Shown: piece by piece, positions 8,307 to 28,502 of the stretch
Layout: every line of letters begins with the position of its first letter
Position numbering within the stretch: the stretch's first letter is position 1
Source: Octopus sinensis
Taxonomy: Eukaryota
NCBI RefSeq assembly: GCF_006345805.1
Contig: NW_021833497.1
Coordinates: 1-28,502, forward strand
Direction of reading: 5' to 3'
DNA length: 28,502 nt
The notes under the pieces: generated by a model
What the model was told of the DNA's origin: nothing
Database searches by the model: none
What the model saw: only the letters and a program-made list of their open reading frames with translations
Made by a program: the position numbers and the translations under genes

Positions 8307-8937
8307 AGGCGCAGGCGTGGCAGTGTGGTAAGAAGCTTGCTTCCCAACCACATGGTTCCGGGTTCAGCCCCCAGGAAAGTATCTTCTACTATAACCTCGG
8401 ACCGACCAAAGTTTTATTAGTGAATTTGGTTGACGGAAACTGAAATAATTCCTATTTCTTTACTACCCACAAGGGGCTAAACACAGAGGGGACAAACAAG
8501 GACAGACATAGGTATTAAGTCGATCACATCGACCCCAGTGCGTAACTGGTGCATAATTTATCGACCCCGAAAGGATGAAAGGCAAAGTCGACCTCGGCGG
8601 AATTTGAACCCAGAACGTAACTGCAGACGAAATACCGCTCGGCAGTTCACCCGGCCTGCTAACGATTGTGCCAGTTCGCCGCCCTCTGAAATAATTCCGT
8701 TGTGTGTGTGTATGTGCGTGCGTGCGTGCGTGCGTGTTAGTGGCGGGGGGGGACAACCGGTGTTGGTTTGTTTCACGTCTGTAATTTAGAGGTTCAGCAA
8801 AAACGACCGACAGAATGAGTACCAGGCTTTAAAAAATAATAAGTACTGGGGCTGATTTGTTCGACTAAAAATTCTTCAAGGTGGTGCCCCAGCATGGGCG
8901 CAGTCTGATGACTAAAATAATTAAAACGATAAAAGGA
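8307..8937 (+). mobile_element. SINE family A interrupted by a family B insertion
   Basis: Head 8307-8452 and remainder 8686-8937 match 16461-16860. Confidence 0.8.
8453..8685 (-). mobile_element. SINE family B, full length, 13-bp TSD
   Basis: CTGAAATAATTCC at 8440-8452 and 8686-8698; internal GTCGACTTTGCCTTTCATCCTTTCGGGGTCGATAAA resembles the Nin/Deu-type SINE domain. Confidence 0.85.
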
Positions 8938-9014
8938 TATATACGTAGATCCTCAGTTATATTTGCATGTGCGTATCTTGTATGTGTGCATGTCAATATA
9001 TATTTTTCGCCAAT

Positions 9015-9683
9015 GTATTTCTTTACTACCCACAAGGGGCTACGCACAGAGGGGACAAACAAGGACAGACAAACGGATTAAGTCGATTATATCGACCCCA
9101 GTGCGTAACTGGTACTTAATTTATCGACTCCGAAAGGATGAAAGGCAAAGTGGACCGCGGCGGAATTTGAACTCAGAACGTAGCGGCAGACGAAATACCT
9201 ATTTCTTTACTACCCACAAGGGGCTAAGCATATAGAGGACAAACAAGGACAGACAAACGGATTAAGTCGATTATATCGACCCCAGTGTGTAACTGGTACT
9301 TATTTAATCAACCCCGAAAGGATGAAAGGCAAAGTCGATCATGGCGGAATTTGAACTCGGAACATAACGGCAGACGAAATACCACTGAGCATTTCGCCCG
9401 GCGTGCTAACGCTTCTGCCAGCTCGCCGCCTTATCGAAGGATATAAATACCTATTTCTTTACTACCCACAAGGGGCTACACACAGAGGGGACAAACAAGG
9501 ACAGACAAACGGATTAAGTCGAATATATCGACCCTAGTGCGTAACTGGTACTTAATTTATCGACCCCGAAAGGATGAAAGGCAAAGTCGACCTCTGCGGA
9601 ATTTGAACTCAGAACGTAGCGGCAGACGAAATACCGCTAAGCATTTCGCCCGGCGTGCTAACGTTTCTGCCAGCTCGCCGCCC
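9015..9683 (-). mobile_element. Tandem trimer of SINE family B
   Basis: Copies at 9015-9199 (headless), 9200-9430 and 9451-9683; direct repeat TATCGAAGGATATAAATAC at 9432-9450 and 9684-9702. Confidence 0.9.
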
Positions 9684-10724
9684 TATCGAAGGATATAAAT
9701 ACCGGTAAAGAAAACCGCTACTTTTCAAACTTGCAAGTGATGGGTTTTGTTTTTGTTTTATTGTCTGTAGCGATTCGTCCGTTTCGGCAAATCACTTGTA
9801 ACCAACAAAGTTATTTCTCATCGATTGCGTTATAAAAAGCATAAACAAATATATAAATAAGTGAACCAGTAAACTAAGTGAATTAGTGTTAAATGTCGAT
9901 GACAACATCAGCAAAACTGCGCAAACGATGAAATACGAAGCAGTCATTCATTGGTTAGTAAACAGGCTTACTATCGATTCACACAAGGACACTCCCTCAG
10001 ATTTTTACTGATCATGCGATACCCCAGTCATCTTTCCCTCCTATCCTCGTATGTTTCAAACCAGCGTGAAATATTAAATCATGGATAATAAGCAAATGAC
10101 GCCATAGGTTAAAGAGACAGAGACAGAGATGGGGGTAGAAAGAGACAGACTTAGAGCGGGAAGGGAAGACAGTCAGAGGCAGAGGTGGAAGGAGGAGGAC
10201 GTGCTTTTATTTGCTTTGGTTTATTTATTGACTAACTGATTACTATGAAACTCATAGATGAATTGATTAAAATTTATTCTTCCGTTCTTTGATGTACGTA
10301 TATTTGTTGCACCAATCCACCCGTATTTACAATATGCATTCATGAGAGGAAACCATCTGCGATAAAATAAGGATAACATTAATTTTACGTTGGATTTCTC
10401 TTAATCATTTTGCATATTCTTTAGCTTTAATATTCGTCCTCTTCCGTCTCTGAGGCTTACCGAATAAACAATCTTTAATGTTGTTCTCGTTAAAAGTTTA
10501 GCTCATTTCAAATTCAATGTTTTGTTGAATAATACATGAAGCTAAAATCAACGCTTTTTATAATATCTGCTATATGTGATTTGTATTATTCCTGTTGAAA
10601 ATAGACTTCGTGTCTTGGTCGCTTCAAACGAGAAATCCATGGAAATTTCTTGTAATATTATCCCATGAGATATACATAACTCGCGTTATGATGTTCTTTG
10701 ATACTTCATTTACTTGTGTACGTG

Positions 10725-11837: not shown

Positions 11838-12071
11838 GAAGGCGGCGAGCTGGCAGAATCGTTAGCACGCCGGGCGAAATGCGTAGCCGTATTTCGTCTG
11901 CCGCTACGTTCTGAGTTCAAATTCCGCCGAGGTCGACTTTGCCTTTCGTCCTTTCGGGGTCGATTAAATGAGTACCGGTTATGCACTGGGGTCGATATTA
12001 TTGACTTAATCCGTTTGTCTGTCCTTGTTTGTCCGCTCTATGTTTAGCCCCTGGTGGGTAATAAAAAAAAC
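11838..12071 (+). mobile_element. SINE family B, full length, 16-bp TSD
   Basis: ATATT(T/C)ATGCCTACAT at 11822-11837 and 12072-12087. Confidence 0.9.
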
Positions 12072-12169: not shown

Positions 12170-13105
12170 GCTAAGAAAGAATGATAGCAACAGCTGAGAA
12201 TGATGCTTCTTGGAAAGCTGTTGCAGCAGCTAACTTTATCATCTTTTCTACTGCCTGTGAGGGAATAATTTGTGCTGTTGAGCGTGTTGGTTTTCGTGAG
12301 ACAAAAGTTCGCCAAGACCACCTTGACACGATAAAACAATATCTGTTGGAAACCCTAATTATCACACTGAAGGAGATTGCTGCCAAGTTTGCTAATGTGG
12401 TTGGCTTCACTGAGAGCATGAACCCAGTTCACAGACATCTCGACGGTCAGTTATACACAATGAAAAGAGTAGTCTCACAACCCGTCTCAGTGACTTTCAA
12501 AACAAATAAAGAAAAGGAAGGAACATTTGGAGAAATTAATGCAAAGGATTCAACGTGGGAAAATTATAGTAGTCTATACTGACGAAACAAATTTGAATTT
12601 TTTCCTACGACAATCTCAGGCTGGGTTAGATGCATGAGGAAAAGTTCTACAACTAAAGGACAAAAAACAATTATATACATGTTGGAGTTTCACAGCCTTG
12701 TATCGTTTATTGGGAACGCTGAAGGGGAAGCTAGAAGAAGGAAGATTATCAGGAATGGCAACGACGAATTGTCCGATGCTCCACACAATTACTGACTTTC
12801 TTGGCTACATTGTAGTTGTTTGTGATAATGTACCCTTTTATACTGACCTTGAAAGCATTGTTGCGAAGAAAAAATTCTACGGGTTCGATATATTGCATGG
12901 AAGCACATGTAGTTGTCCACTAAACCCCATTGAAGTGTATTGGAGCATCGTGAAAGCTGCTGTGAAGAGCTTTCTGGAAGATAATTTTGCTAATGTGATA
13001 AATACTCCAGCAGTTGGTATGACAGAGAGTGAGTATCGAATACAGTACCTAGAATGCTCAACTGCTAATGCCATTTCAACCATCATACCAGCTTTGCATC
13101 TCTGA
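12170..13105 (+). pseudogene. IS630/Tc1/mariner-superfamily DDE transposase, frameshifted
   Basis: N-terminal ASWKAVAAAN helix; IVVYTDETN in a shifted frame (D at 12581); VVVCDNVP (D at 12824); PLNPIEVYWSIVK (E at 12932). There are 35 residues between the second D and E, plus stops and frameshifts. Confidence 0.8.
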
Positions 13106-15466: not shown

Positions 15467-15845
15467 AGAGGAAAGTCCAATAGAAAAGGAATCGCCAACG
15501 ATTCACAGTATCAGAAAGATATGCACTTGTATATTTTTCATTACTGGTATCTCTAATCGAATTGTAACCTAACACTCCGACGACCCTTAATGACCCCTAG
15601 TGCGAAACCGACCTGTAAAATTGGCCATAATTGATATATAATATTATACACTTCGATTTATATATATATATATATATATATATAATGGTTGTATACTGTC
15701 AATCTAACGTGAACGTGACGGTAGGGGGTTACACACCGTTGTTTAGCCCTAGGAAGCATCGACGCTTTCTGATGGCTTCGACACATTTTTCCTGTGTCCT
15801 TATATACATTTACGAAGGGGAGACAAACACCCCCAGCAGCCAGGC

Positions 15846-15904
15846 CTGCATCTGGAGACACGCATGTTTCAGGATCATTGTCCATCATCGGTCTAGAGTA
15901 GCAG
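15846..15904 (-). ncRNA. Hammerhead motif with core substitution (CCGATGA)
   Basis: Paralogue of 16156-16214 with U4 changed to C, so probably impaired. Confidence 0.55.
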
Positions 15905-16155
15905 ACGCCCGATTCGCAAATGTATATATCTAATTTTCAGTGAAGTTTATCCACTGATTACCAAAATCAGAAATGTTAAATTTCTAAATCTCTCATAGAG
16001 ATATGTACGGTGGTGGGGCGATAGAATGGTTGTATACTGCCAATCTAACTTGAACGTGACAGTAGGGGTTTACACCACCGCTGTTTAGCCCTAGGAAGCA
16101 TCGACGCTTTCTGATGTCTTCGACATCGGGATAGATATTCTCGGCTGACGGGCGT

Positions 16156-16214
16156 CTGCTACTCTAGACTGATGATGGACAATGATCCTGAAACATGTGT
16201 GTCTCCAGATGCAG
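16156..16214 (+). ncRNA. Type I hammerhead ribozyme motif
   Basis: CTGC-tac-TCTAGA-CTGATGA-T-GGA caatga TCC-T-GAAACA-tgtg-TGT-C-TCCAGA-t-GCAG. Core intact with a GUC site (cut after 16203) and an extended, bulged stem I. Confidence 0.72.
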
Positions 16215-16460
16215 GCCTGGCTGCTGGGGGTGTTTGTCTCCCCTTCGTAAATGTATATAAGGACACAGGAAAAATGTGTCGAAGCCATCAAAAAGCGTCG
16301 ATACTTCCTAGGGCTAAACAGCGGTGGTGTAACCCCCTACTGGCACGGTCACGTTAGATTGACAGTATACAACCATTCTATCGCCCCACCACCGTACATA
16401 TCTCTATGAGATATTTAGAAATTTAATATTTCTGATTTTATATATATATATATATATATA

Positions 16461-17210: not shown

Positions 17211-18598
17211 TTAACAAGGAGAGCGAAGTGAGCAAGTTGTCTTATTGCATAGATCTATAATTATTTCACTGGCATTCCAACTCAACAATACTGCTATATT
17301 TTAATATAATAAATGCAAGTATAGTCTTAAGCCCTATCATTATATTCATACGCTTGAATGTCGACTCATCAGAATCGTGTATATTTTTCCTTCCTTTTTT
17401 TTTCTTGTGATATGTCAACGTATTCATAGGAACACATATATTTGCTGTGGATATAATATCGTAAAAATTCACGTTCTCTATAACATATAATTTAATACAC
17501 GATTCTCATGAGAAGACTTTCGAGTATATCAATATAATGATACAGCTTGAGTCTATAGTTGCATATATTAGAAAATAATATAGCAATAATCTTGGGTTCG
17601 AATGCCAATGAAACAATTGTAAATTTATGTAATAAAACGACTTGATCTTTCCACCCTTCTTATTAATAATGATATAAATTCTACGGATGTTTATGGGTTT
17701 GGGGAAATATGATCCACAAAATATCGACCTCCGATTAAAACTCATACCTTATAAGCTGTTCACGTTGACGAGCTTAAAAGTTTAAACACCGGGGTTAATA
17801 AAATTCTTATTCACTTTTGACCATAGGCTGAAACAGCTGTAAGAAGTAATTTCTGGATTTCAATAATTTATAATATGACTTTTAAAATCTGTATTTGTAT
17901 TATTATCTTATCTATTGATTTATATAATATTTTGTTTGCTTTTGATGTTCTCATTTGTAAAATGAATAATCCGTAAGTTGATGAACAAACTAAATTCAGG
18001 ACGTGGCGAGCCAATAAGCGGGCCCCTCATTATAATTATGTATATAATTACTGACTACTGCAAATTTTGGGTGAATACTTGATAAGTGTAAGCACCTGTA
18101 TACGCCAGATAGGTGAAAGAGAATATATCAAATATCTGGCGTATGCTCTGCCACCTTTGTGTTCTGTTTTTGATTTTATTTGTTATATATATATATATAT
18201 AATAAAACGGAAAATGTGTGTATGTGTACAGGTATTTTTCTTGATCCCCCTTAAAATCAGTATTTTTCATCCGATTTCATTCACGCTGGGAACATACATC
18301 CCTTATAATCCCGAGATGGTCATAGACTCTTCCAATTTGCCGCATAAAGAGTAATTTCGCCTCTAAGGGACAAAAACACCTTCTCATAGGTAGATAACAA
18401 ATACCAACGATCGTTGCTTCAAAGGACATTATTCTTTCACTTCGTCTATTTTCACTTCGCCTTCACTGCAAACCGCCGATATTTGTATATTAGCACTTTC
18501 TTGAAGTAGCCATACAATTTAAACCAACTTTAAATTATATTTTTAAAATCTTCAGAAATTAATGCATATTATATATATTCTCTGCTTTTACTCATACA

Positions 18599-18828
18599 TA
18601 TTTCTTTACTACCCACAAGGGGTTTAAACACAGGGGGGACAAGCAAGGACAGACAAACGAATTAAGTCGATTACATCGACCCCAATGCGTAACTGGTACT
18701 TAATTTATCGACCCCGAAAAGATGAAAGGCAAAGTCGACCTCGACGGAATTTGAACTCACAACGTAACGGCAGCCGAAATACCGCAAAGCATTTCGCCTG
18801 ACGTGAAACGATTCTGCCAGCTCGCCGC
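18599..18828 (-). mobile_element. SINE family B, full length
   Basis: Matches the other family B copies; ACTCATAC at 18590-18597 and 18829-18836 is a likely TSD. Confidence 0.85.
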
Positions 18829-19184
18829 ACTCATACCAACTTGTGACAATTATACAGTTTTTACAATGCCGATATTTTACACTGCAAACTGCCGATATCT
18901 GCTTGTTAGAATTTCCTTGAACAATCGTTGCTTCAGGGGACATTACTACTTGCATGTTAGCACTTCCTTGATGTAGCCTGGCAATTTAAATAAACTTTTC
19001 AATATGTTTTAAATGCCTTAAGACAATGTTTAACCAGAAAGCCCAAAGGCTCAAACGTCTCAACCATTCTTAATACCATTGTGACAATTTTCTGAACTTA
19101 CTCGCGTGTGTGTATGTGTGTATGTGTGTATGTATGTATGTATATATATACCAATATCGATTAGATGATTTGATGTTGTTATAC

Positions 19185-21626: not shown

Positions 21627-23958
21627 TCAGTAGTTTTATTTTTATAGCGTGCTTTCACTTTACTACCGAGCACAGCTCTGTGTGCCTTGGGTATGTGCTG
21701 TGATTTGTTGTGATGCTCTGATGGTTATTGTATGGAAAGTGTTCTGCGTAGGATGTGTGCAGTGCCTAGTATTGCAATGTTCTGTATGTTATATGTGTTT
21801 GTAAGTCCTGGTGTTTTTGTTATGTATTTGTCTGAATATTTTTTTATCATGCCTAATGCACCTACTATGATAGGAATTGTTTCTGTTTTCAGATTCCACA
21901 TTCTAGTTACCTCTATTTCCAGGTCTTTGTATTTTGAGAGTTTCTCCATTTCTTTTAGAGACACGTTGTCATCAGCCGTATTGATACATCAATTAGAAAG
22001 CTTTTTTTCTTCATGATCTCTGACAACTATATCTGGTCTGTTGGCCTTAATTTCTCTATCTGTGTGTATCGGCATATCCCAGAGTATGGTTCTTTTTCTC
22101 GTTTTCTGTGACCTTTTCTGGTGTGTGCCTATACCATCTTTTCTGTTGTTATTCCATAATGTTGGCATAGCTTCCAATGTATGTAGGTTCCAACTCTGTC
22201 ATGTCTGTGAATATATTCCTTCTTAGCCAGGACTGGGCAGCTAGAGATAATATGATTTATTGTTTCTTGTCCATCTCCACATATTCTGCAGTTACTTGTA
22301 TATTTCTTTCATTTCATCATTTTTTGGTAATTTCTGGTGGGGAGGCTTTGGTCTTGTGCTGCAATTAAAAATCCCTCTGTTTCTGCTTTGAGTCTGAGCT
22401 TCTCAACCATTGCTGGGATTTTTCTTTGTCTATTTCTTTTGCGTTTAGTTTAGTCCAGTATTTACCATGAAGGGGCTTTTCTTGCCATCGTTTTATCATG
22501 GTTCGTTGCTGTTCTATTTTTAGTTTGGATTTCATTGTTTTTATAGCTTTTGTTGTTTCTTCTTCATTTCTTCTTCTTCTTTCTGTTTATTAGGTGGTAT
22601 GATTTCTTGTTTGTATTTGTCAGCTTCCTTAAATACTGAGAACAGTTTTTTTGTTTTGCTCGTGTTTTGCCGCTATCTGGATCAGTTTTCCTTCCTTCTG
22701 AGTAGATATTTTTGCAGTCCTATGGTGGTTATTTTATAGTATTTCCAGCTGTATAAGGCCTCTACCACCTTCTATACGTTGTATATATAGTCTTCTATGT
22801 CAGATTTTGGGTGATGCATCCTAGATCCTGTCATTATTTTTCTCGTTTTCCTATCTATTTTGGTCAGTTCATTTCGTGTCCAGTTAAGGATATTGTAGCT
22901 GTAACTTATAACTGGGACAGCTAAAGTGTTGATACCTATTATCTTGTTTTAGCATTGAGCTCTGTGTTTAGTATTGATCTAACTCGTCTTAATATTCTTT
23001 TTTTATTTTCTCTTTCATTTGTGTGTGTTGTGTCTTATCTAGTTCATGGATTCCTAAGTATTTGTAAGTTTGGCTTTGGTCTAATTCTTTTATTTCATTG
23101 GTTTTATCTAGTGTGATGTGTTACTCTTAACTAGTTTTCCTCTTTTCAGGGTTACTTGGCGCATTTTTCTAATCCAAATTTCATATCTATTTCTTTGGTA
23201 AACCCATGAACTGTCTTTAATAGTGTTTCCAGCTGTTTGTCATTTGCAGCTTATAGTTTTAGGTCATCCATATATAAAAGGTGGCTGATCGTTTTGCCGT
23301 AACATTTATATCCGCATCCAGTTCTATTTAGCATATCAGATAGAGGTGACAGTGCCAAGCAGAAAAGGAGTGGAGAGAGCGGTCTCCCTGAAATATTCCT
23401 CTTCTAATGGGGATGTCTTTGGTTTTCATGAGGTCCCTCTTTTTTTGGAGGTGTAGGACTGTTTGCCATTTATTCATAGAGTGCTCTATGAACTTTATGA
23501 TTGTTGGTGCTGTACTTTGTTAATGGCTGTGTTTCGAGGATCTGTGTGGGGGATGCTATCAAACGCCTTTTTGTAGTCAATCCAGGCCATACTGAGGCCT
23601 TTCTTCTTTCTGTGGCTGTCTTCAGTTATGGCTTTATTAATCATTAGTTGATCTTTACAGCCATATGAACCCTTGCGGCATCCTTTCTGCTCTTCTGGGA
23701 ACAGTTTGTTTTCGTCCAGGTGCTTGTTCAGCCTTTGTGATATCACTGCAGTAAATGCCTTGAACATAGTAGGGAGGCAGGTTATTGGTCTGTAGTTTTC
23801 TGGTTTTTCTGTTTCATTTAATTTGGGAATTAAGATGGTTTTCCCCTTCGTGAGCCATTCAGGCATTGTCTCTGGCTCTGCTAGTACGTTGTTAAAGTTT
23901 TTAGCCAGCTTTTTGTGCATTCCTAAAGTTTTCAGCCAGCTTTTGGTGCATTCCTTAG
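21627..23958 (-). mobile_element. 5'-truncated R4/Dong-clade non-LTR retrotransposon (RT, CCHC knuckle, restriction-like endonuclease), decayed
   Basis: ENYRPITCLPT, QKG, WIDYKKAFDSIPH, GIFQGD, YMDD (23263-23274), CRICG..H..SSC (22237-22290), RPDIVV and KYKDLEIEVTRMW; stops and frameshifts present. Confidence 0.9.
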
Positions 23959-23980
23959 ATTATTATTATTATGATTATTA

Positions 23981-24670: not shown

Positions 24671-26160
24671 ATACAAATATATCATCATCATCACCATCAT
24701 CCTCATCATCGTTTAACCTCAGCTTTCCATTCTAGCATGGGTTGGACCGTTTGACTGAGGACTGGCAAGCCAGAAGGTTGCACCAGGCTCCAATCTGATC
24801 TGGCAAGGTTTCTACAACTACAAGCTTTTCCTAACGCCAGCAACTCAGAGAGTATAGTGGGGGTATGGGGGGAAGTCAGGCGGCCCTGGCATCGACCACG
24901 CTCGAATGGTACCTTTCACGTGCCACCAGCACGGGAGCCAGTCAGGCGGCACTGGCATCGACCACGTTTGAATGGTGCCTTTTACGTGCCACCGGTACGG
25001 GAACCAGTCAGGCGGCACTGGCATCGACCATGTTCGAATGATGCTCTTTACGTGCCACCGGCACGGGTGCCAGTCAGGCCGAACTGGAATCGGCCACGAC
25101 TACGATTTCACTTGACACAACAGGTCTTCTCAAGCACAGCATATTGCTCGACGATCGAAGGGCACTTTTAAAAGGGCTGGTTATGCGATACTGGCATTGG
25201 CCACGGCTACGATCTCACTTGGCTTGCCGGCTCTTCCCAAACATAGCATATCTCCAAAATTTACGGTCGCTTACCATTGCCTCAGTGAGGCCCAAGGTTC
25301 GGAGGTTGTGCTTCACCACCTTATCCCAGGTCTTCCTGTGTTTACCTCTTCCACAGGTTCCCTTCACTGTTAAGGTATGATACTTGTTCACACAGCTCCT
25401 CATCCATAAGCACCACATAGCCACGCCAGCGCAGTCGTCTCTCTTGCACACCACATTTGATGCTTCTTATGTCCAACTTTTCTCTCGGAGTGCTTACACT
25501 CTTTGGTGTATGCACACTGACATTACTCATCCAGCAGAGCATACTAGCTTCATTTCTTTCAAGTCTACGCCTGTCATCAGCAGTCACAGCCCATGTTTCA
25601 CTGCCGTGTAGCATGGCAATTCGTACACATGCATCATACAATCTACCTTTCAATCTGAGCGAGAGGCCCTTTGTCACCAGCAGAGTAGGAGCTCTCTGAA
25701 CATTGCCCAGGCTATTCTTATTCTAGCAGCTACGCTCTCGAGCCATCCACTCCACTCCTGCTACTGACTTGGTCACCTAGGTAACGGAAGCTATCAACTA
25801 CTTCTAGTTTTTCCCCTGGCATGTGATGGAATCTGTTTTCTGTACATCTTCGGTGTTTGTTGCCCCTGTGCATCTTCCACACACAAAAACTATTTTCTCA
25901 GTTCCTTTGATAATGCTGCACCTCTTATGTGTCCATAGCTTACACCAGGTCCACGCTATGTAGTTTCTACCTACGCCTTCTCTACAAATAGAGCAAGACC
26001 ATGAACCTGAAGGGATCTGTGATTTGTCCGCCTTCCTATTTACTATGGCTTTGGTTTTTGCCAGATTAACTCTAAAACCCTTCGATTCTAGACTTTGCTT
26101 CCACATGTTTACATGACTTGTAGGGATTTTAACAGACATTGCATTGAAAATGGTCATTCG
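24671..26160 (-). mobile_element. 5'-truncated RTE-clade LINE (RT C-terminus, 3' UTR, (GAT)n tail), decayed
   Basis: WKQSLESKGFRVNLAKTK, FRYLG, KGRLYDACVRIAMLHGSETWA, RRLRW and GRGKHRKTW across shifted frames; (CAT)n at ~24681-24710. Confidence 0.85.
24874..25100. repeat. 66-bp minisatellite, ~3.4 copies, in the RTE 3' UTR
   Basis: AGTCAGGC starts at 24874, 24940, 25006 and 25072. Confidence 0.9.
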
Positions 26161-26367
26161 GAATGAAAGTCCAATAGTTCATGTATTACTTACTCAAATA
26201 GGAATGCTGGTGCGATTTCATACCAGCGTGAGATATACATACGTTTTTGCGTAAATAACATTTAAAGAAGGAACGAGTAACTCTCGTGAAGCTATCTTAT
26301 ATATATAATATATATGTGTGTTTTGTGTGTGGTTGCATGTGTATATACATACATACATATATATATA

Positions 26368-26409
<42 letters not shown>

Positions 26410-26970
26410 ACCTTCGAAACAAGCTGGAGTTGAACTAGGGACGGCTGATGAAGGGGATTTTCCTTGTGTAGTGTCTTGTACCCGTTGTTTTTTCGTTGTT
26501 AAAGGAATGGTCCGTTCCATGCTGTTTTTGCATGCTGTTTCTGTGGTGTCCTCTACAACGTATATATATTATATATGCTTGTATATATACATGTAGATGT
26601 AGGTACGTACATATATGTTTGTATGTATGCATATATTTATTTATACACATTGTATGACTGAGCGCCTTCGGTCGATCGATTCGATTCGTTTGGTTTCGTT
26701 TCTTCTTCTCTAAGCTGGTTTTATATATATATATATATATAATTAATCAATATAGGGTGCCAAAAAAAATTTTGTAGAATTTTTTTGCCACCAGCGGCCT
26801 AGTGGGAAAAAATTAAATAGTCATAGACCATTTTTAAGTCCAACATCAACAATCAAGGAACGGCCATAATAGGCCATTCACCCACTAGAAATAACAGCCA
26901 AAGCTTCAACCGCAAATTAAAATCAATTCCGTTAAACCAGGTGAAAATTTAAAAAACATCTTACCCTATA

Positions 26971-27077
26971 ATTTCTTATACGATGCACCGTTTCATCTGC
27001 TGTTTAATGGTAAACTAACCTGATTAAATTAAATCAAGCCAATCTTCCATAGGCCCTCAGATTCTTCAGTAAGAAAT
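26971..27077 (-). ncRNA. Type I hammerhead ribozyme with extended stem II
   Basis: ATTTCTTA-CTGAAGA-ATCTG-[58 nt]-CAGAT-GAAACGG-tgca-TCGT-A-TAAGAAAT. Stem I 8/8, stem II 5/5, stem III 4 bp, GUA site. Confidence 0.85.
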
Positions 27078-27459
27078 AGCCAAGTCGGAACAGATATTTT
27101 CACGAGGCATTTCCGACCCGGCCAAGGCATATCTGACCTAAAATTTTCAAATCATCGCACTCGCGCCAAAATTATCGGCGGCAGTAAATAAATATAAGCC
27201 GTCGATTCCATTACGGATTAACCATAAAATTCATAATTAATCAATATAGGTGCCAAAAAAAATTTTGTAGAATTTTTTGCCACCAGCGGCCTAGTGGGAA
27301 AAAATTAAATAGTCATAGACCATTTTTAGTTCAAACATCAACAATCAAGGAACGGCCATAATAGGCCATTCACCCACTAGAAATAACAGCCAAGCTTCAA
27401 CCGCAAATAAAAATCAATTCCGTAAACCAGGAGAAAATTTAAAAAACATTTACCCTGTA

Positions 27460-27564
27460 ATTTCTTATACGATGCACCGTTTCATCTGCGTTTAATGGTA
27501 AACTAACCTGATTAAATTAAATCAAGCCAATCTCCATAGGCCTTCAGATTCTTCAGTAAGAAAT
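27460..27564 (-). ncRNA. Type I hammerhead ribozyme with extended stem II (second monomer)
   Basis: Core and stems I-III are identical to 26971-27077; the differences lie in the stem II insert. Confidence 0.85.
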
Positions 27565-28086
27565 AGCCAAGCCGGAAAGATATTTTCACGAGGCATTTCC
27601 GACCCTGCCAAGGCAATATCTGACCTAAAATTTTCAAATCATCGCACTCGCGCCAAATTTATCGGCATTAAACAGCAGATGAAACGGTGCGTGCATCGAT
27701 AAGAAATTACAGGGTAAATGTTTTTTAAATTTTCTCCTGGTTTACGGAATTGATTTTTATTTGCGGTTGAAGCTTTGGCTGTTATTTCTAGTGGGTGAAT
27801 GGCCTATTATGGCCGTTCTTGATTGTTGATGTTGAACTTAAAAATGGTCTATGACTATTTAATTTTTTCCCACTAGGCCGCTGGTGGCAAAAAAATTCTA
27901 CAAAATTTTTTTTTGGCACCCTATATGATAATTATGGATTTTCTGGTTAATTCCGTAATGGAATCGACGGCTTATATTATTGCAGCCGATAATTTGGCGC
28001 GAGTGCGATGATTTGAAAATTTTAGGTCAGATATTGCCTTGGCAGGGTCGGAAATGCCTCGTGAAAATATCTGTTCCGACTTGGCT

Positions 28087-28190
28087 ATTTCTTACTGAAG
28101 AATCTGGGCCTATGGAAGATTGGCTTGATTTAATTTAATCAGGTTAGTTTACCATTAAACAGCAGATGAAACGGTGCATGTATAAGAAAT
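28087..28190 (+). ncRNA. Type I hammerhead ribozyme with extended stem II (inverted monomer)
   Basis: ATTTCTTA-CTGAAGA-ATCTG...CAGAT-GAAAC-ggtgcat-GT-A-TAAGAAAT; one C is missing in stem III relative to the other copies. Confidence 0.8.
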
Positions 28191-28502
28191 ACAGGGTAAA
28201 TGTTTTTTAAATTTTCTCCTGGTTTACGGAATTGATTTTATTGTGCGTTGAAGCTTGGCTGTTATTTCTAGTGGGTGAATGGCCTATTATGGCCGTTCCT
28301 TGATTGTTGATGTTGAACTTAAAAATGGTCTATGACTATTTAATTTTTCCACTAGGCCGCTGGTGGCAAAAAAATTCTACAAAATTTTTTTGCCACCCTT
28401 ATTGATTAATTATGAATTTTATGGTTAATTCCGTAATGGAATCGACGGCTTATATTTATTTGCAGCCGATAAATTTGGCGCGAGTGCGATGATTTGAAAT
28501 TT

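What the first reader, a model, noticed from the sequence alone, without database searches (positions are those of the whole stretch)
26739..28502. ~490-nt tandem repeat with one hammerhead ribozyme per monomer: candidate retrozyme-like circular-RNA element
Seen: each monomer carries a complete type I HHR (26971-27077 minus, 27460-27564 minus, 28087-28190 plus). Each has an intact CUGAAGA/GAAA core, a perfect 8-bp stem I, a 5-bp stem II and a GUA site. The predicted cuts at 27468 and 26979 are 489 nt apart, and no coding signature is evident. Known: animal retrozymes are non-coding tandem repeats with type I HHRs whose transcripts self-cleave to monomers and circularise. Inferred: this is such an element, longer than the monomers I recall (up to about 400 nt). 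I do not know of a description in cephalopods but cannot check novelty.
Basis: partly seen in the sequence, partly recalled or inferred. Interest (0 to 1): 0.93.

Follow-up and report, generated by a model that had tools for sequence, protein, structure and literature searches.

The report
Hammerhead-ribozyme repeat, retrozyme-like, inserted head-to-head
A non-coding ~490-base repeat at the end of the window carries one complete but atypical hammerhead self-cleaving motif per unit and looks like an animal "retrozyme", a known kind of parasitic element that spreads through small circular RNAs, so it is probably a new example and not a new kind of thing.

Summary
Three complete type I hammerhead (HHR) motifs sit at the stated coordinates, with a CUGAAGA/GAAA core, an 8-9 bp helix I, a 5 bp helix II and a GUA site. 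Cut sites are 489 nt apart and nothing is coding. None of 40,000 shuffled monomers gave a motif as good.

The array is not one tandem run. It is two opposed blocks (26739-27666 minus-sense, 27667-28502 plus-sense). Their 5'-truncated ends meet head-to-head at 27666/27667, and the left 3' end abuts a (TA)10 microsatellite. This is the layout expected of target-primed reverse transcription and described for Penelope-like elements.

Helix III ends in a palindromic UGCA loop, so two copies can form a 12-bp duplex (a double hammerhead, as in newt and Penelope HHRs). The HHR strand folds much better than its complement.

The HHR is atypical: A10.1-U11.1 replaces the conserved G-C, helix II carries a ~56-nt extra hairpin, and no Rfam hammerhead model matches.

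No other copies could be retrieved, so covariation, activity, circles and host lineage are untested. A length of 490 nt is not exceptional, given pDo500 (~500 bp) and retrozyme families of 51-972 bp.

Verdict: probable new member of the non-LTR retrozyme / HHR-satellite kind; moderate interest.

The parts
26721..26738 (.). (TA)n microsatellite that the left end of the element abuts; presumed target. The edge is ambiguous by about 3 nt (ATA overlap).
26739..27666 (-). Block 1: 1.9 repeat units with the HHR sense on the minus strand. The RNA-sense 3' end lies at the (TA)n flank. The 5' end is truncated at monomer column ~296, at the junction.
27667..28502 (+). Block 2: 1.7 repeat units with the HHR sense on the plus strand. 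The 5' end is truncated inside HHR helix II at the junction. The block runs off the window end.
27666..27667 (.). Head-to-head inversion junction with 1-nt (C) microhomology. It is asymmetric, so it is not a simple fold-back palindrome.
26979..27467 (-). Full monomer between two predicted cut sites (489 nt); the predicted circular RNA unit.
27700..28182 (+). Full monomer in the plus block (483 nt), 95% identical to the minus monomer.
26971..27077 (-). HHR copy 1: helix I 8 bp, CUGAAGA, helix II 5 bp plus arm, GAAA, helix III ACGG-UGCA-UCGU, GUA (H17 = 26979).
27460..27564 (-). HHR copy 2, same architecture (H17 = 27468).
28086..28191 (+). HHR copy 3: helix I 9 bp; helix III weakened to 3 bp by loss of C16.3 (H17 = 28182).
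27667..27707 (+). Truncated and damaged half-HHR at the junction. It lacks helix I 5' strand, the CUGAAGA box and most of helix II. It carries a GTGC duplication and has lost U16.1.
27000..27057 (-). Helix II extension arm of copy 1: internal loop, 4 bp, then a 14-bp hairpin with loop AAUUUA. Equivalent arms lie at 27489-27544(-) and 28107-28162(+).

Best explanation
This is a non-autonomous, non-coding retroelement of the animal non-LTR retrozyme / HHR-satellite kind.

Shown from sequence:
- Each ~483-489-nt unit encodes, on one strand only, a complete type I hammerhead.
- That strand is U/G-rich and folds far better than its complement.
- The copy in this window consists of two opposed, 5'-truncated multimeric blocks. 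Their RNA-sense 5' ends meet in the middle, and the left block's 3' end sits in a (TA)n microsatellite.

Inferred mechanism, following the published retrozyme model:
1. A multimeric transcript of the HHR-sense strand self-cleaves after GUA. The cleavage probably works best as a double hammerhead, in which two neighbouring helix III / UGCA-loop segments form a 12-bp intermolecular helix.
2. [quoted passage not shown]
3. The circle, or a multimer, is copied by the reverse transcriptase of an autonomous element. That element is most likely Penelope-like, possibly a LINE. Priming occurs at a nicked TA-rich target.
4. Going round the circle gives more-than-unit-length cDNA.
5. Priming from both nicked strands (twin priming) gives the head-to-head inverted blocks.
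For: - Complete core and three helices in 3 of 3 full copies.
- 0 of 40,000 shuffled monomers give an equal motif.
- The HHR fold lies within 1.5 kcal/mol of the unconstrained optimum for two copies, and 3.3 kcal/mol for the third.
- Loop 3 is the palindrome UGCA. Two copies form a 12-bp duplex at -19.5 kcal/mol, against -1.2 for the hairpin. This matches the short helix III with palindromic loop described for metazoan type I and Penelope HHRs and their dimeric action.
- Sense against antisense folding of the unit: -145.9 against -97.5 kcal/mol as a linear RNA (z -5.5 against -3.1). As a circle, -139.8 against -93.1 kcal/mol, with 65% against 47% of bases paired.
- GC is 36% and there are no ORFs.
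- The block orientation, 5' truncations, 1-nt junction microhomology and (TA)10 flank match published Penelope-like insertion structures. Those are partial tandems with an inverted 5'-truncated copy and TA-type microsatellite targets.
- The link from retrozymes to Penelope-like elements comes.
Against: - No Rfam hammerhead model matches, even at E<=10 on the isolated motif.
- The 10.1-11.1 pair is A-U, whereas G-C is the most conserved helix pair after 15.1-16.1.
- Helix II carries a ~56-nt arm, and there are no recognisable loop 1/loop 2 contacts. Altering helix lengths can cut activity strongly.
- Only three near-identical copies are available, so there is no covariation. HHR columns vary no less than the rest: 9 of 107 against 45 of 390 variable columns, p = 0.48.
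- No Penelope-type RT or GIY-YIG ORF was seen in the window. The only reverse transcriptase is a LINE-type fragment.
- The right end and any target-site duplication lie outside the window.
- No expression data are available.
Confidence: 0.6

Rival explanations
1. This is an ordinary tandem or satellite repeat in which a hammerhead-like motif arose by chance or is a long-dead relic. The RNA does not self-cleave, and the array grew by DNA-level processes such as unequal exchange or replication slippage.
For: - No Rfam hammerhead match.
- A10.1-U11.1, the long helix II arm and the missing tertiary-contact loops.
- The HHR is not more conserved than the rest of the unit.
- One strict and four relaxed chance motifs appeared in 300 shuffles of the whole window, so a genome-wide scan will meet some false positives.
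Against: - 0 of 40,000 shuffled monomers give an equal motif.
- Several features not required by the descriptor fit real metazoan HHRs: the palindromic loop 3, type I topology, one strand only, and the HHR lying on the better-folding strand.
- Opposed 5'-truncated blocks abutting (TA)n are a retrotransposition signature, not an unequal-exchange signature.
Confidence: 0.15
2. The repeats are not an independent retrozyme. They are the terminal (pseudo-LTR) region of an autonomous Penelope-like or other element whose coding body lies beyond the window end, or a SINE-like HHR retroposon of the Schistosoma Sm-alpha type.
For: - Penelope-like elements carry type I HHRs in their terminal repeats. They insert as partial tandems with an inverted 5'-truncated copy, and some clades prefer (TA)n.
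- Retrozymes are reported to be related to these terminal repeats.
- The plus block runs off the window.
Against: - The repeated unit is only ~490 nt and repeats directly without any ORF between units, in both blocks. In a Penelope partial tandem the unit would be the whole ~3-kb element.
- Penelope HHRs are mostly minimal variants with little or no helix III, unlike this motif.
- No GIY-YIG or Penelope-type RT was found in the window.
Confidence: 0.15
3. The head-to-head arrangement is an assembly artefact at a contig end (a chimeric or fold-back long read, or a collapsed repeat). The real locus is a simple one-orientation tandem array. This rival concerns the architecture only, not the HHR.
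For: - The array lies at the very end of the window.
- About half of the variable columns between copies are 1-nt indels, many of them in A/T homopolymer runs, as in error-prone long-read assemblies.
Against: - The junction is asymmetric. The minus block stops at monomer column ~296 and the plus block starts at column ~467, so it is not the exact palindrome that a missed-adapter or fold-back read produces.
- The two blocks are not mirror copies of each other; their variants differ in a mosaic way.
Confidence: 0.1

Closest known systems
Metazoan non-LTR retrozymes (Cervera and De la Pena 2020, PMC7229834), e.g. Mytilus galloprovincialis 350-390 nt, Acropora 220-240 nt, axolotl 330/350 nt
   Same: Short non-coding repeats of low GC, with one type I HHR per unit on one strand and a well-paired predicted RNA. 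There is no LTR, PBS or PPT. Mussel HHRs likewise lack most of the canonical loop 1/loop 2 contact nucleotides.
   Different: - The unit is longer than the 170-400 nt reported in 2020, although it lies within the 51-972 bp of a 2026 preprint.
- Helix II has a ~56-nt arm, and 10.1-11.1 is A-U.
- Helix III is 3-4 bp, against 1-2 bp.
- Only short opposed blocks are seen here.
- Cleavage and circles are untested.
pDo500 satellite of Dolichopoda cave crickets (PMC2837043)
   Same: A ~500-bp repeat with an embedded type I HHR. Single and double hammerhead modes have been proposed for it, and natural variation at 10.1-11.1 has been reported.
   Different: pDo500 is an abundant satellite (about 5% of the genome) with a compact 49-nt HHR, whose cleavage has been shown in vitro. 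Here the HHR domain is ~105 nt, and its copy number is unknown.
Newt satellite 2 / axolotl HHR_Amex1-2
   Same: A type I HHR in repeats, with a weak helix III capped by a palindromic tetraloop, acting as a dimer.
   Different: The amphibian motifs keep G10.1-C11.1, a 4-bp helix II with loop 2, and the loop 1/loop 2 contacts. Their units are 330-350 nt.
Penelope-like element terminal-repeat HHRs and Penelope insertion architecture (PMC4209133, PMC8557442)
   Same: Type I HHRs that act as dimers, palindromic helix III / loop 3, a larger-than-usual helix II, partial tandems with an inverted 5'-truncated copy, and microsatellite targets.
   Different: Penelope HHRs are mostly minimal and sit in a ~3-kb element that encodes RT plus GIY-YIG. 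No such ORF is present here.
Plant LTR retrozymes (PMC4918200)
   Same: Non-autonomous HHR elements that make circular RNA intermediates.
   Different: The plant elements have type III HHRs inside LTRs, plus PBS and PPT, 4-bp target duplications and 600-1000 nt circles. None of these features applies here.

Membership tests
Hammerhead ribozyme | Conserved core C3-U4-G5-A6-N7-G8-A9 and G12-A13-A14 | tested here: met
   CUGAAGA and GAA are intact in all three full copies.
Hammerhead ribozyme | A15.1-U16.1 pair and H17 (not G) at the cleavage site | tested here: met
   A-U pair followed by A17 (a GUA triplet) in three copies. The junction half-copy has lost U16.1. GUA is a known natural triplet (abstract of PMC1636495).
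Hammerhead ribozyme | Three helices around the core; type I means helix I is open | tested here: met
   Helix I is 8-9 bp and open. Helix II is 5 bp, closed by an arm. Helix III is 3-4 bp, closed by UGCA.
Hammerhead ribozyme | G10.1-C11.1 pair (the most conserved helix pair after 15.1-16.1) | tested here: not met
   The pair is A10.1-U11.1 in all copies. Its conservation is stated. Natural exceptions exist: U-U and compensatory changes in pDo500.
Hammerhead ribozyme | Score at or above the Rfam covariance-model threshold (Hammerhead_1/3/II/HH9/HH10) | tested here: not met
   No hammerhead match at gathering score, nor at E<=10 on 2.1 kb or on the 126-nt motif alone. I infer, without testing it, that the ~56-nt helix II insertion is the likely reason.
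Hammerhead ribozyme | Loop 1/loop 2 tertiary contacts of extended natural HHRs | tested here: inconclusive
   Helix I is a perfect 8-9 bp with no internal loop. Helix II has an internal loop 5 bp from the core that could stand in for loop 2. No canonical contact nucleotides are recognisable. Mussel retrozyme HHRs lack them too.
Hammerhead ribozyme | Site-specific Mg2+-dependent self-cleavage | not testable with these tools
   Needs in vitro transcription.
Animal non-LTR retrozyme | Short tandem DNA repeats, each with one type I HHR | tested here: met
   Units of 483-492 nt, one HHR each. They form two opposed blocks of 1.9 and 1.7 units.
Animal non-LTR retrozyme | Unit size in the reported range | tested here: inconclusive
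   Outside 150-450 bp and 170-400 nt. Inside 51-972 bp.
Animal non-LTR retrozyme | Non-coding, GC below 50%, no LTR/PBS/PPT | tested here: met
   GC is 36%. The longest open frame is 66 codons and is not conserved. There are no terminal repeats other than the unit itself. PBS and PPT were not searched for explicitly.
Animal non-LTR retrozyme | Stable, highly self-paired RNA of the HHR polarity | tested here: met
   Circular fold of -139.8 and -135.8 kcal/mol, z about -5, 61-65% paired. The antisense gives z about -3 and 47-48% paired.
Animal non-LTR retrozyme | Expressed as monomer-length linear and circular RNA | not testable with these tools
   No transcriptome of the host is available.
Animal non-LTR retrozyme | Co-occurrence with autonomous Penelope-like elements in the same genome | not testable with these tools
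   Only 28.5 kb is available. The window holds LINE-type RVT_1 fragments and a weak DDE_3 match, and no GIY-YIG. The host genome is not represented in the protein database; the best RT hit is 62% identical.
Plant LTR retrozyme | Type III HHRs within LTRs, plus PBS and PPT | tested here: not met
   The HHR is type I, and the whole unit is the repeat.

The most novel reading that the evidence does not exclude
The motif is an active hammerhead of an undescribed architecture. It combines an A10.1-U11.1 pair with a conserved ~56-nt helix II arm whose internal loop replaces loop 2. It acts as a double hammerhead and defines a lineage-specific (possibly cephalopod) retrozyme family that makes abundant ~489-nt circular RNAs. 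Its head-to-head, microsatellite-targeted insertions would be direct genomic evidence for twin-primed, rolling-circle reverse transcription of retrozyme circles.
Probability: 0.25. Interest if true: 0.55.

Novelty: new member of a known kind. Interest (0 to 1): 0.4.

Why it matters
If active, this element would extend HHR retrozymes to another animal lineage. No paper in the searched library links retrozymes or genomic hammerheads to cephalopods, apart from a passing mention in a Penelope-element paper.

It would also add a hammerhead that current covariance models miss because of its long helix II arm. That is a reminder that Rfam-based censuses undercount such ribozymes.

The insertion architecture gives a concrete, checkable footprint of how retrozyme RNA is copied back into DNA, a step that is still only a model. 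The relevant features are the two opposed 5'-truncated multimers, the microhomology at the junction and the (TA)n target.

It is not a new principle. The element class, dimeric HHR action and ~500-bp HHR repeats are all already described.

Tried and rejected
- **Rfam.** Three searches (whole window at gathering score; 2.1 kb at E<=10; the 126-nt motif at E<=10) gave no ribozyme family. The only hits were low-complexity miRNA-like matches in the TA-rich flank.
- **Pattern scans.** I scanned the metagenome and viral collections with CTGAAGAATCTG-N40-70-CAGATGAAAC. The 31 + 2 loci share nothing with the monomer beyond the pattern (longest blastn match 21 nt), so they are chance matches.
- **Peptide trick.** I tried to fetch other genomic or transcript copies through short ORF peptides translated from the monomer. 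No protein-database hit resulted.
- **Host identification.** I searched with the neighbouring LINE RT ORF. The best hit is 62% identical and unnamed, so the host genome is not represented and the cephalopod attribution stays unverified. The window's dispersed ~250-nt repeats resemble, from my memory only, octopus SINE-like sequences. That is a lead, not a test.
- **Conservation test.** HHR against non-HHR columns among the in-window copies gives p = 0.48. This is uninformative with 3-5 near-identical copies and many 1-nt indels.
- **Six-frame Pfam scan by DNA reference.** I scanned selected stop-free segments instead.
- **tRNA scan.** None found in the window.
- **Second ribozyme on the opposite strand (viroid-like, both polarities).** None was found by the descriptor or by Rfam. 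I rejected this reading.
- **Fold-back assembly artefact.** I consider it unlikely, because the junction is asymmetric.
Full report
**1. What is there**

The last 1.76 kb of the window (26739-28502) is built from a ~483-492-nt unit. A full unit taken between predicted cut sites (26979-27467, minus strand, 489 nt) matches a second full unit at 27700-28179 on the other strand at 95%. It also matches three partial units at 94-96%, and nothing else in the window.

The alignment of all pieces shows that the array is two blocks of opposite polarity, not one tandem run:
- Block 1 (26739-27666) reads in the hammerhead sense on the minus strand (1.9 units).
- Block 2 (27667-28502) reads in that sense on the plus strand (1.7 units) and is cut by the window end.

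The region is 36% G+C. It has no open frame longer than 66 codons, and single-base indels break the frames differently in each copy.

**2. The hammerhead motif**

- 5'-AUUUCUUA (helix I)
- CUGAAGA (C3-A9)
- AUCUG (helix II)
- a ~56-nt arm
- CAGAU (helix II)
- GAA (G12-A14)
- ACGG-UGCA-UCGU (helix III, starting with A15.1 and ending with U16.1)
- A17, then the cut site
- UAAGAAAU-3' (helix I)

My own descriptor for type I hammerheads finds these three motifs and no others on either strand of the 28.5-kb window. H17 falls at 26979(-), 27468(-) and 28182(+). Helices I/II/III are 8/5/4, 8/5/4 and 9/5/3 bp.

With the hammerhead pairing enforced, the ~105-107-nt domain folds within 1.5 kcal/mol of its unconstrained optimum in the two minus copies. 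In the plus copy, which has lost C16.3, the gap is 3.3 kcal/mol.

A fourth motif at the start of block 2 is only a 3' half. It also carries a GTGC duplication and has lost U16.1.

**3. Is it chance?**

Among 40,000 dinucleotide-preserving shuffles of the monomer, scanned as a circle on both strands:
- none had a motif with helices of at least 8/5/3 bp and A15.1-U16.1;
- 2 reached 6/4/2 bp;
- 22 reached 4/3/2 bp.

Shuffles of the entire microsatellite-rich window gave 4 relaxed hits and 1 strict hit in 300. A whole-genome scan will therefore meet some false positives, but the chance that a given repeat family carries one is below about 3 in 100,000.

Three features that the descriptor did not ask for also fit real animal hammerheads:
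- **Topology.** The motif is type I, the form found in metazoan repeats.
- **Loop 3.** It is the palindrome UGCA on a short helix III. Two copies can therefore replace two weak hairpins (-1.2 kcal/mol each) with a 12-bp intermolecular helix (-19.5 kcal/mol). This is the double-hammerhead arrangement known for newt, viroid, mosquito and Penelope hammerheads.
- **Strand asymmetry.** The hammerhead lies on the strand that folds much better. As a linear RNA the unit gives -145.9 kcal/mol (z = -5.5), against -97.5 (z = -3.1) for the complement. As a circle it gives -139.8 against -93.1 kcal/mol, with 65% against 47% of bases paired. The second monomer behaves the same way. The sense strand is U- and G-rich (37% U, 22% G), which allows G-U pairs on that strand only.

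**4. What is atypical**

- No Rfam hammerhead family matches. This holds at gathering score, at E<=10 in 2.1 kb, and at E<=10 on the 126-nt motif alone.
- The 10.1-11.1 pair is A-U in all copies. G-C is described as highly conserved and as the most conserved helix pair after 15.1-16.1. Natural exceptions are known, however.
- Helix II is unusual. After 5 bp comes an internal loop, then 4 bp, then a 14-bp hairpin. This ~56-nt arm is kept in all copies and persists in the whole-unit folds. Canonical metazoan motifs have a 4-bp helix II with a small loop 2 that touches loop 1.
- Helix I is a perfect 8-9 bp with no internal loop, so the usual tertiary contacts cannot be recognised. Mussel retrozyme hammerheads also lack them and cleave more slowly.

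I infer that the long insertion is why the covariance models fail. I could not test this.

**5. Insertion architecture**

Each block has its RNA-sense 5' end in the middle, and the left block has its 3' end at the outside.
- Block 1 begins (in RNA sense) at alignment column ~296.
- Block 2 begins at column ~467, inside helix II.
- They meet at 27666/27667 with a single shared C.

The junction is therefore asymmetric, unlike the exact palindrome that a fold-back sequencing artefact would give. On the left, the 3' end of block 1 (...GAUUAAUUAU) abuts a (TA)10 run with about 3 nt of overlap.

Two opposed, 5'-truncated copies with their 3' ends outwards is what priming of reverse transcription from both nicked target strands produces. 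Penelope-like elements are described as inserting in this way: partial tandems with an adjacent inverted 5'-truncated copy, often into microsatellites such as (TA)n.

More-than-unit-length blocks are expected if the template is a circle or a multimer. This reading is an inference from one locus. The right-hand end and any target duplication lie outside the window.

**6. Surroundings**

The window is repeat-rich animal-type DNA:
- many microsatellites;
- a dispersed ~250-nt repeat family, partly in tandem at 9009-9696;
- a LINE-type reverse-transcriptase fragment at 23498-23959(-), matching RVT_1 at E = 6e-13;
- further ORF fragments at 25218-26178(-) that resemble LINE 3' regions by eye but gave no Pfam match above threshold, and a weak DDE_3 match at 12638-13102(+).

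No GIY-YIG or Penelope-type ORF was seen, and there are no tRNA genes.

**7. Related sequences elsewhere**

None could be obtained.
- Pattern scans of the metagenome and viral collections returned only chance matches.
- Peptides translated from the unit found nothing in the protein collection.
- The neighbouring RT fragment has no relative closer than 62%, so the host genome is not represented.

Covariation could therefore not be tested. Within the window, hammerhead columns vary as much as the rest: 9 of 107 against 45 of 390 variable columns, p = 0.48. With so few copies this says nothing either way.

**8. Comparison with what is known**

The element fits the published definition of animal non-LTR retrozymes on every sequence-level criterion except size as given in 2020 (150-450 bp). 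That definition covers short, low-GC, non-coding repeats, each with a type I hammerhead and a well-paired RNA, lacking LTR, PBS and PPT.

The size is not exceptional. The hammerhead satellite pDo500 of cave crickets is about 500 bp, and a 2026 preprint reports retrozyme consensus lengths of 51-972 bp and ties retrozymes to Penelope terminal repeats.

No paper in the searched library describes genomic hammerheads or retrozymes in cephalopods. That is absence from one library, not proof of novelty.

**9. Verdict**

I put 0.6 on a retrozyme-type element with a working or recently working hammerhead. I put 0.15 on a dead or fortuitous motif in an ordinary repeat, and 0.15 on part of a larger Penelope-like or SINE-like element. 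The remaining 0.1 is left for readings not listed. Separately, I give about 0.1 that the inversion is an assembly artefact.

It is a probable new member of a known kind. Interest is moderate (0.4). It would rise if the long-armed A10.1-U11.1 hammerhead proves active and the twin-primed insertion pattern recurs across the genome.

Noticed in passing
window 8446-8697, 9009-9696, 18593-18844 (+); 11838-12069 and 1913-2068 (inverted): A dispersed ~250-nt repeat family with at least 7 copies in the window at 70-91% identity. It includes a tandem run of about 3.7 units at 9009-9696 (periods 184 and 252). It looks SINE-like. ARAGORN calls no tRNA, and my descriptor finds no hammerhead in it.
   Followed up: partly
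window 23498-23959 (-), 21728-21988 (-), 25218-26178 (-): A LINE-type reverse-transcriptase fragment (RVT_1, E = 6e-13), plus further minus-strand ORF fragments that resemble LINE C-terminal regions and a zinc-finger/PHD-like segment but gave no Pfam match above threshold. They are not collinear, so at least two decayed non-LTR elements lie just upstream of the hammerhead array. The closest database relative of the RT is only 62% identical.
   Followed up: partly
window 12175-13102 (+): Two adjacent open segments with a weak DDE_3 (Tc1/mariner-like transposase) match (E = 0.015). This is probably a decayed DNA transposon.
   Followed up: partly
window 15734-15911 / 16149-16326 and 15963-16125 / 16277-16439: Two interleaved inverted-repeat pairs (97% and 94% complementary). 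They form a complex palindromic structure of about 700 nt, whose nature is unknown.
   Followed up: no
window 24874-25098: A 66-nt G+C-rich tandem repeat (3.4 copies, 86% matches) between the two LINE fragments.
   Followed up: no
window 28362-28397 (+), with equivalents in each unit, e.g. 26762-26800 and 27884-27921: Each monomer contains a near-perfect hairpin, GGUGGCAAAAAAAUUCUACAAAAUUUUUUUGCCACC. Rfam flags it weakly as miRNA-like (mir-5728, E = 0.035, far below threshold). It is probably just part of the unit's paired structure.
   Followed up: partly
window 26739-28502: About half of the variable columns between repeat copies are single-base indels (28 indel against 26 substitution columns), many of them in A/T homopolymer runs. 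This suggests long-read assembly errors, so small differences between copies should not be over-read.
   Followed up: partly
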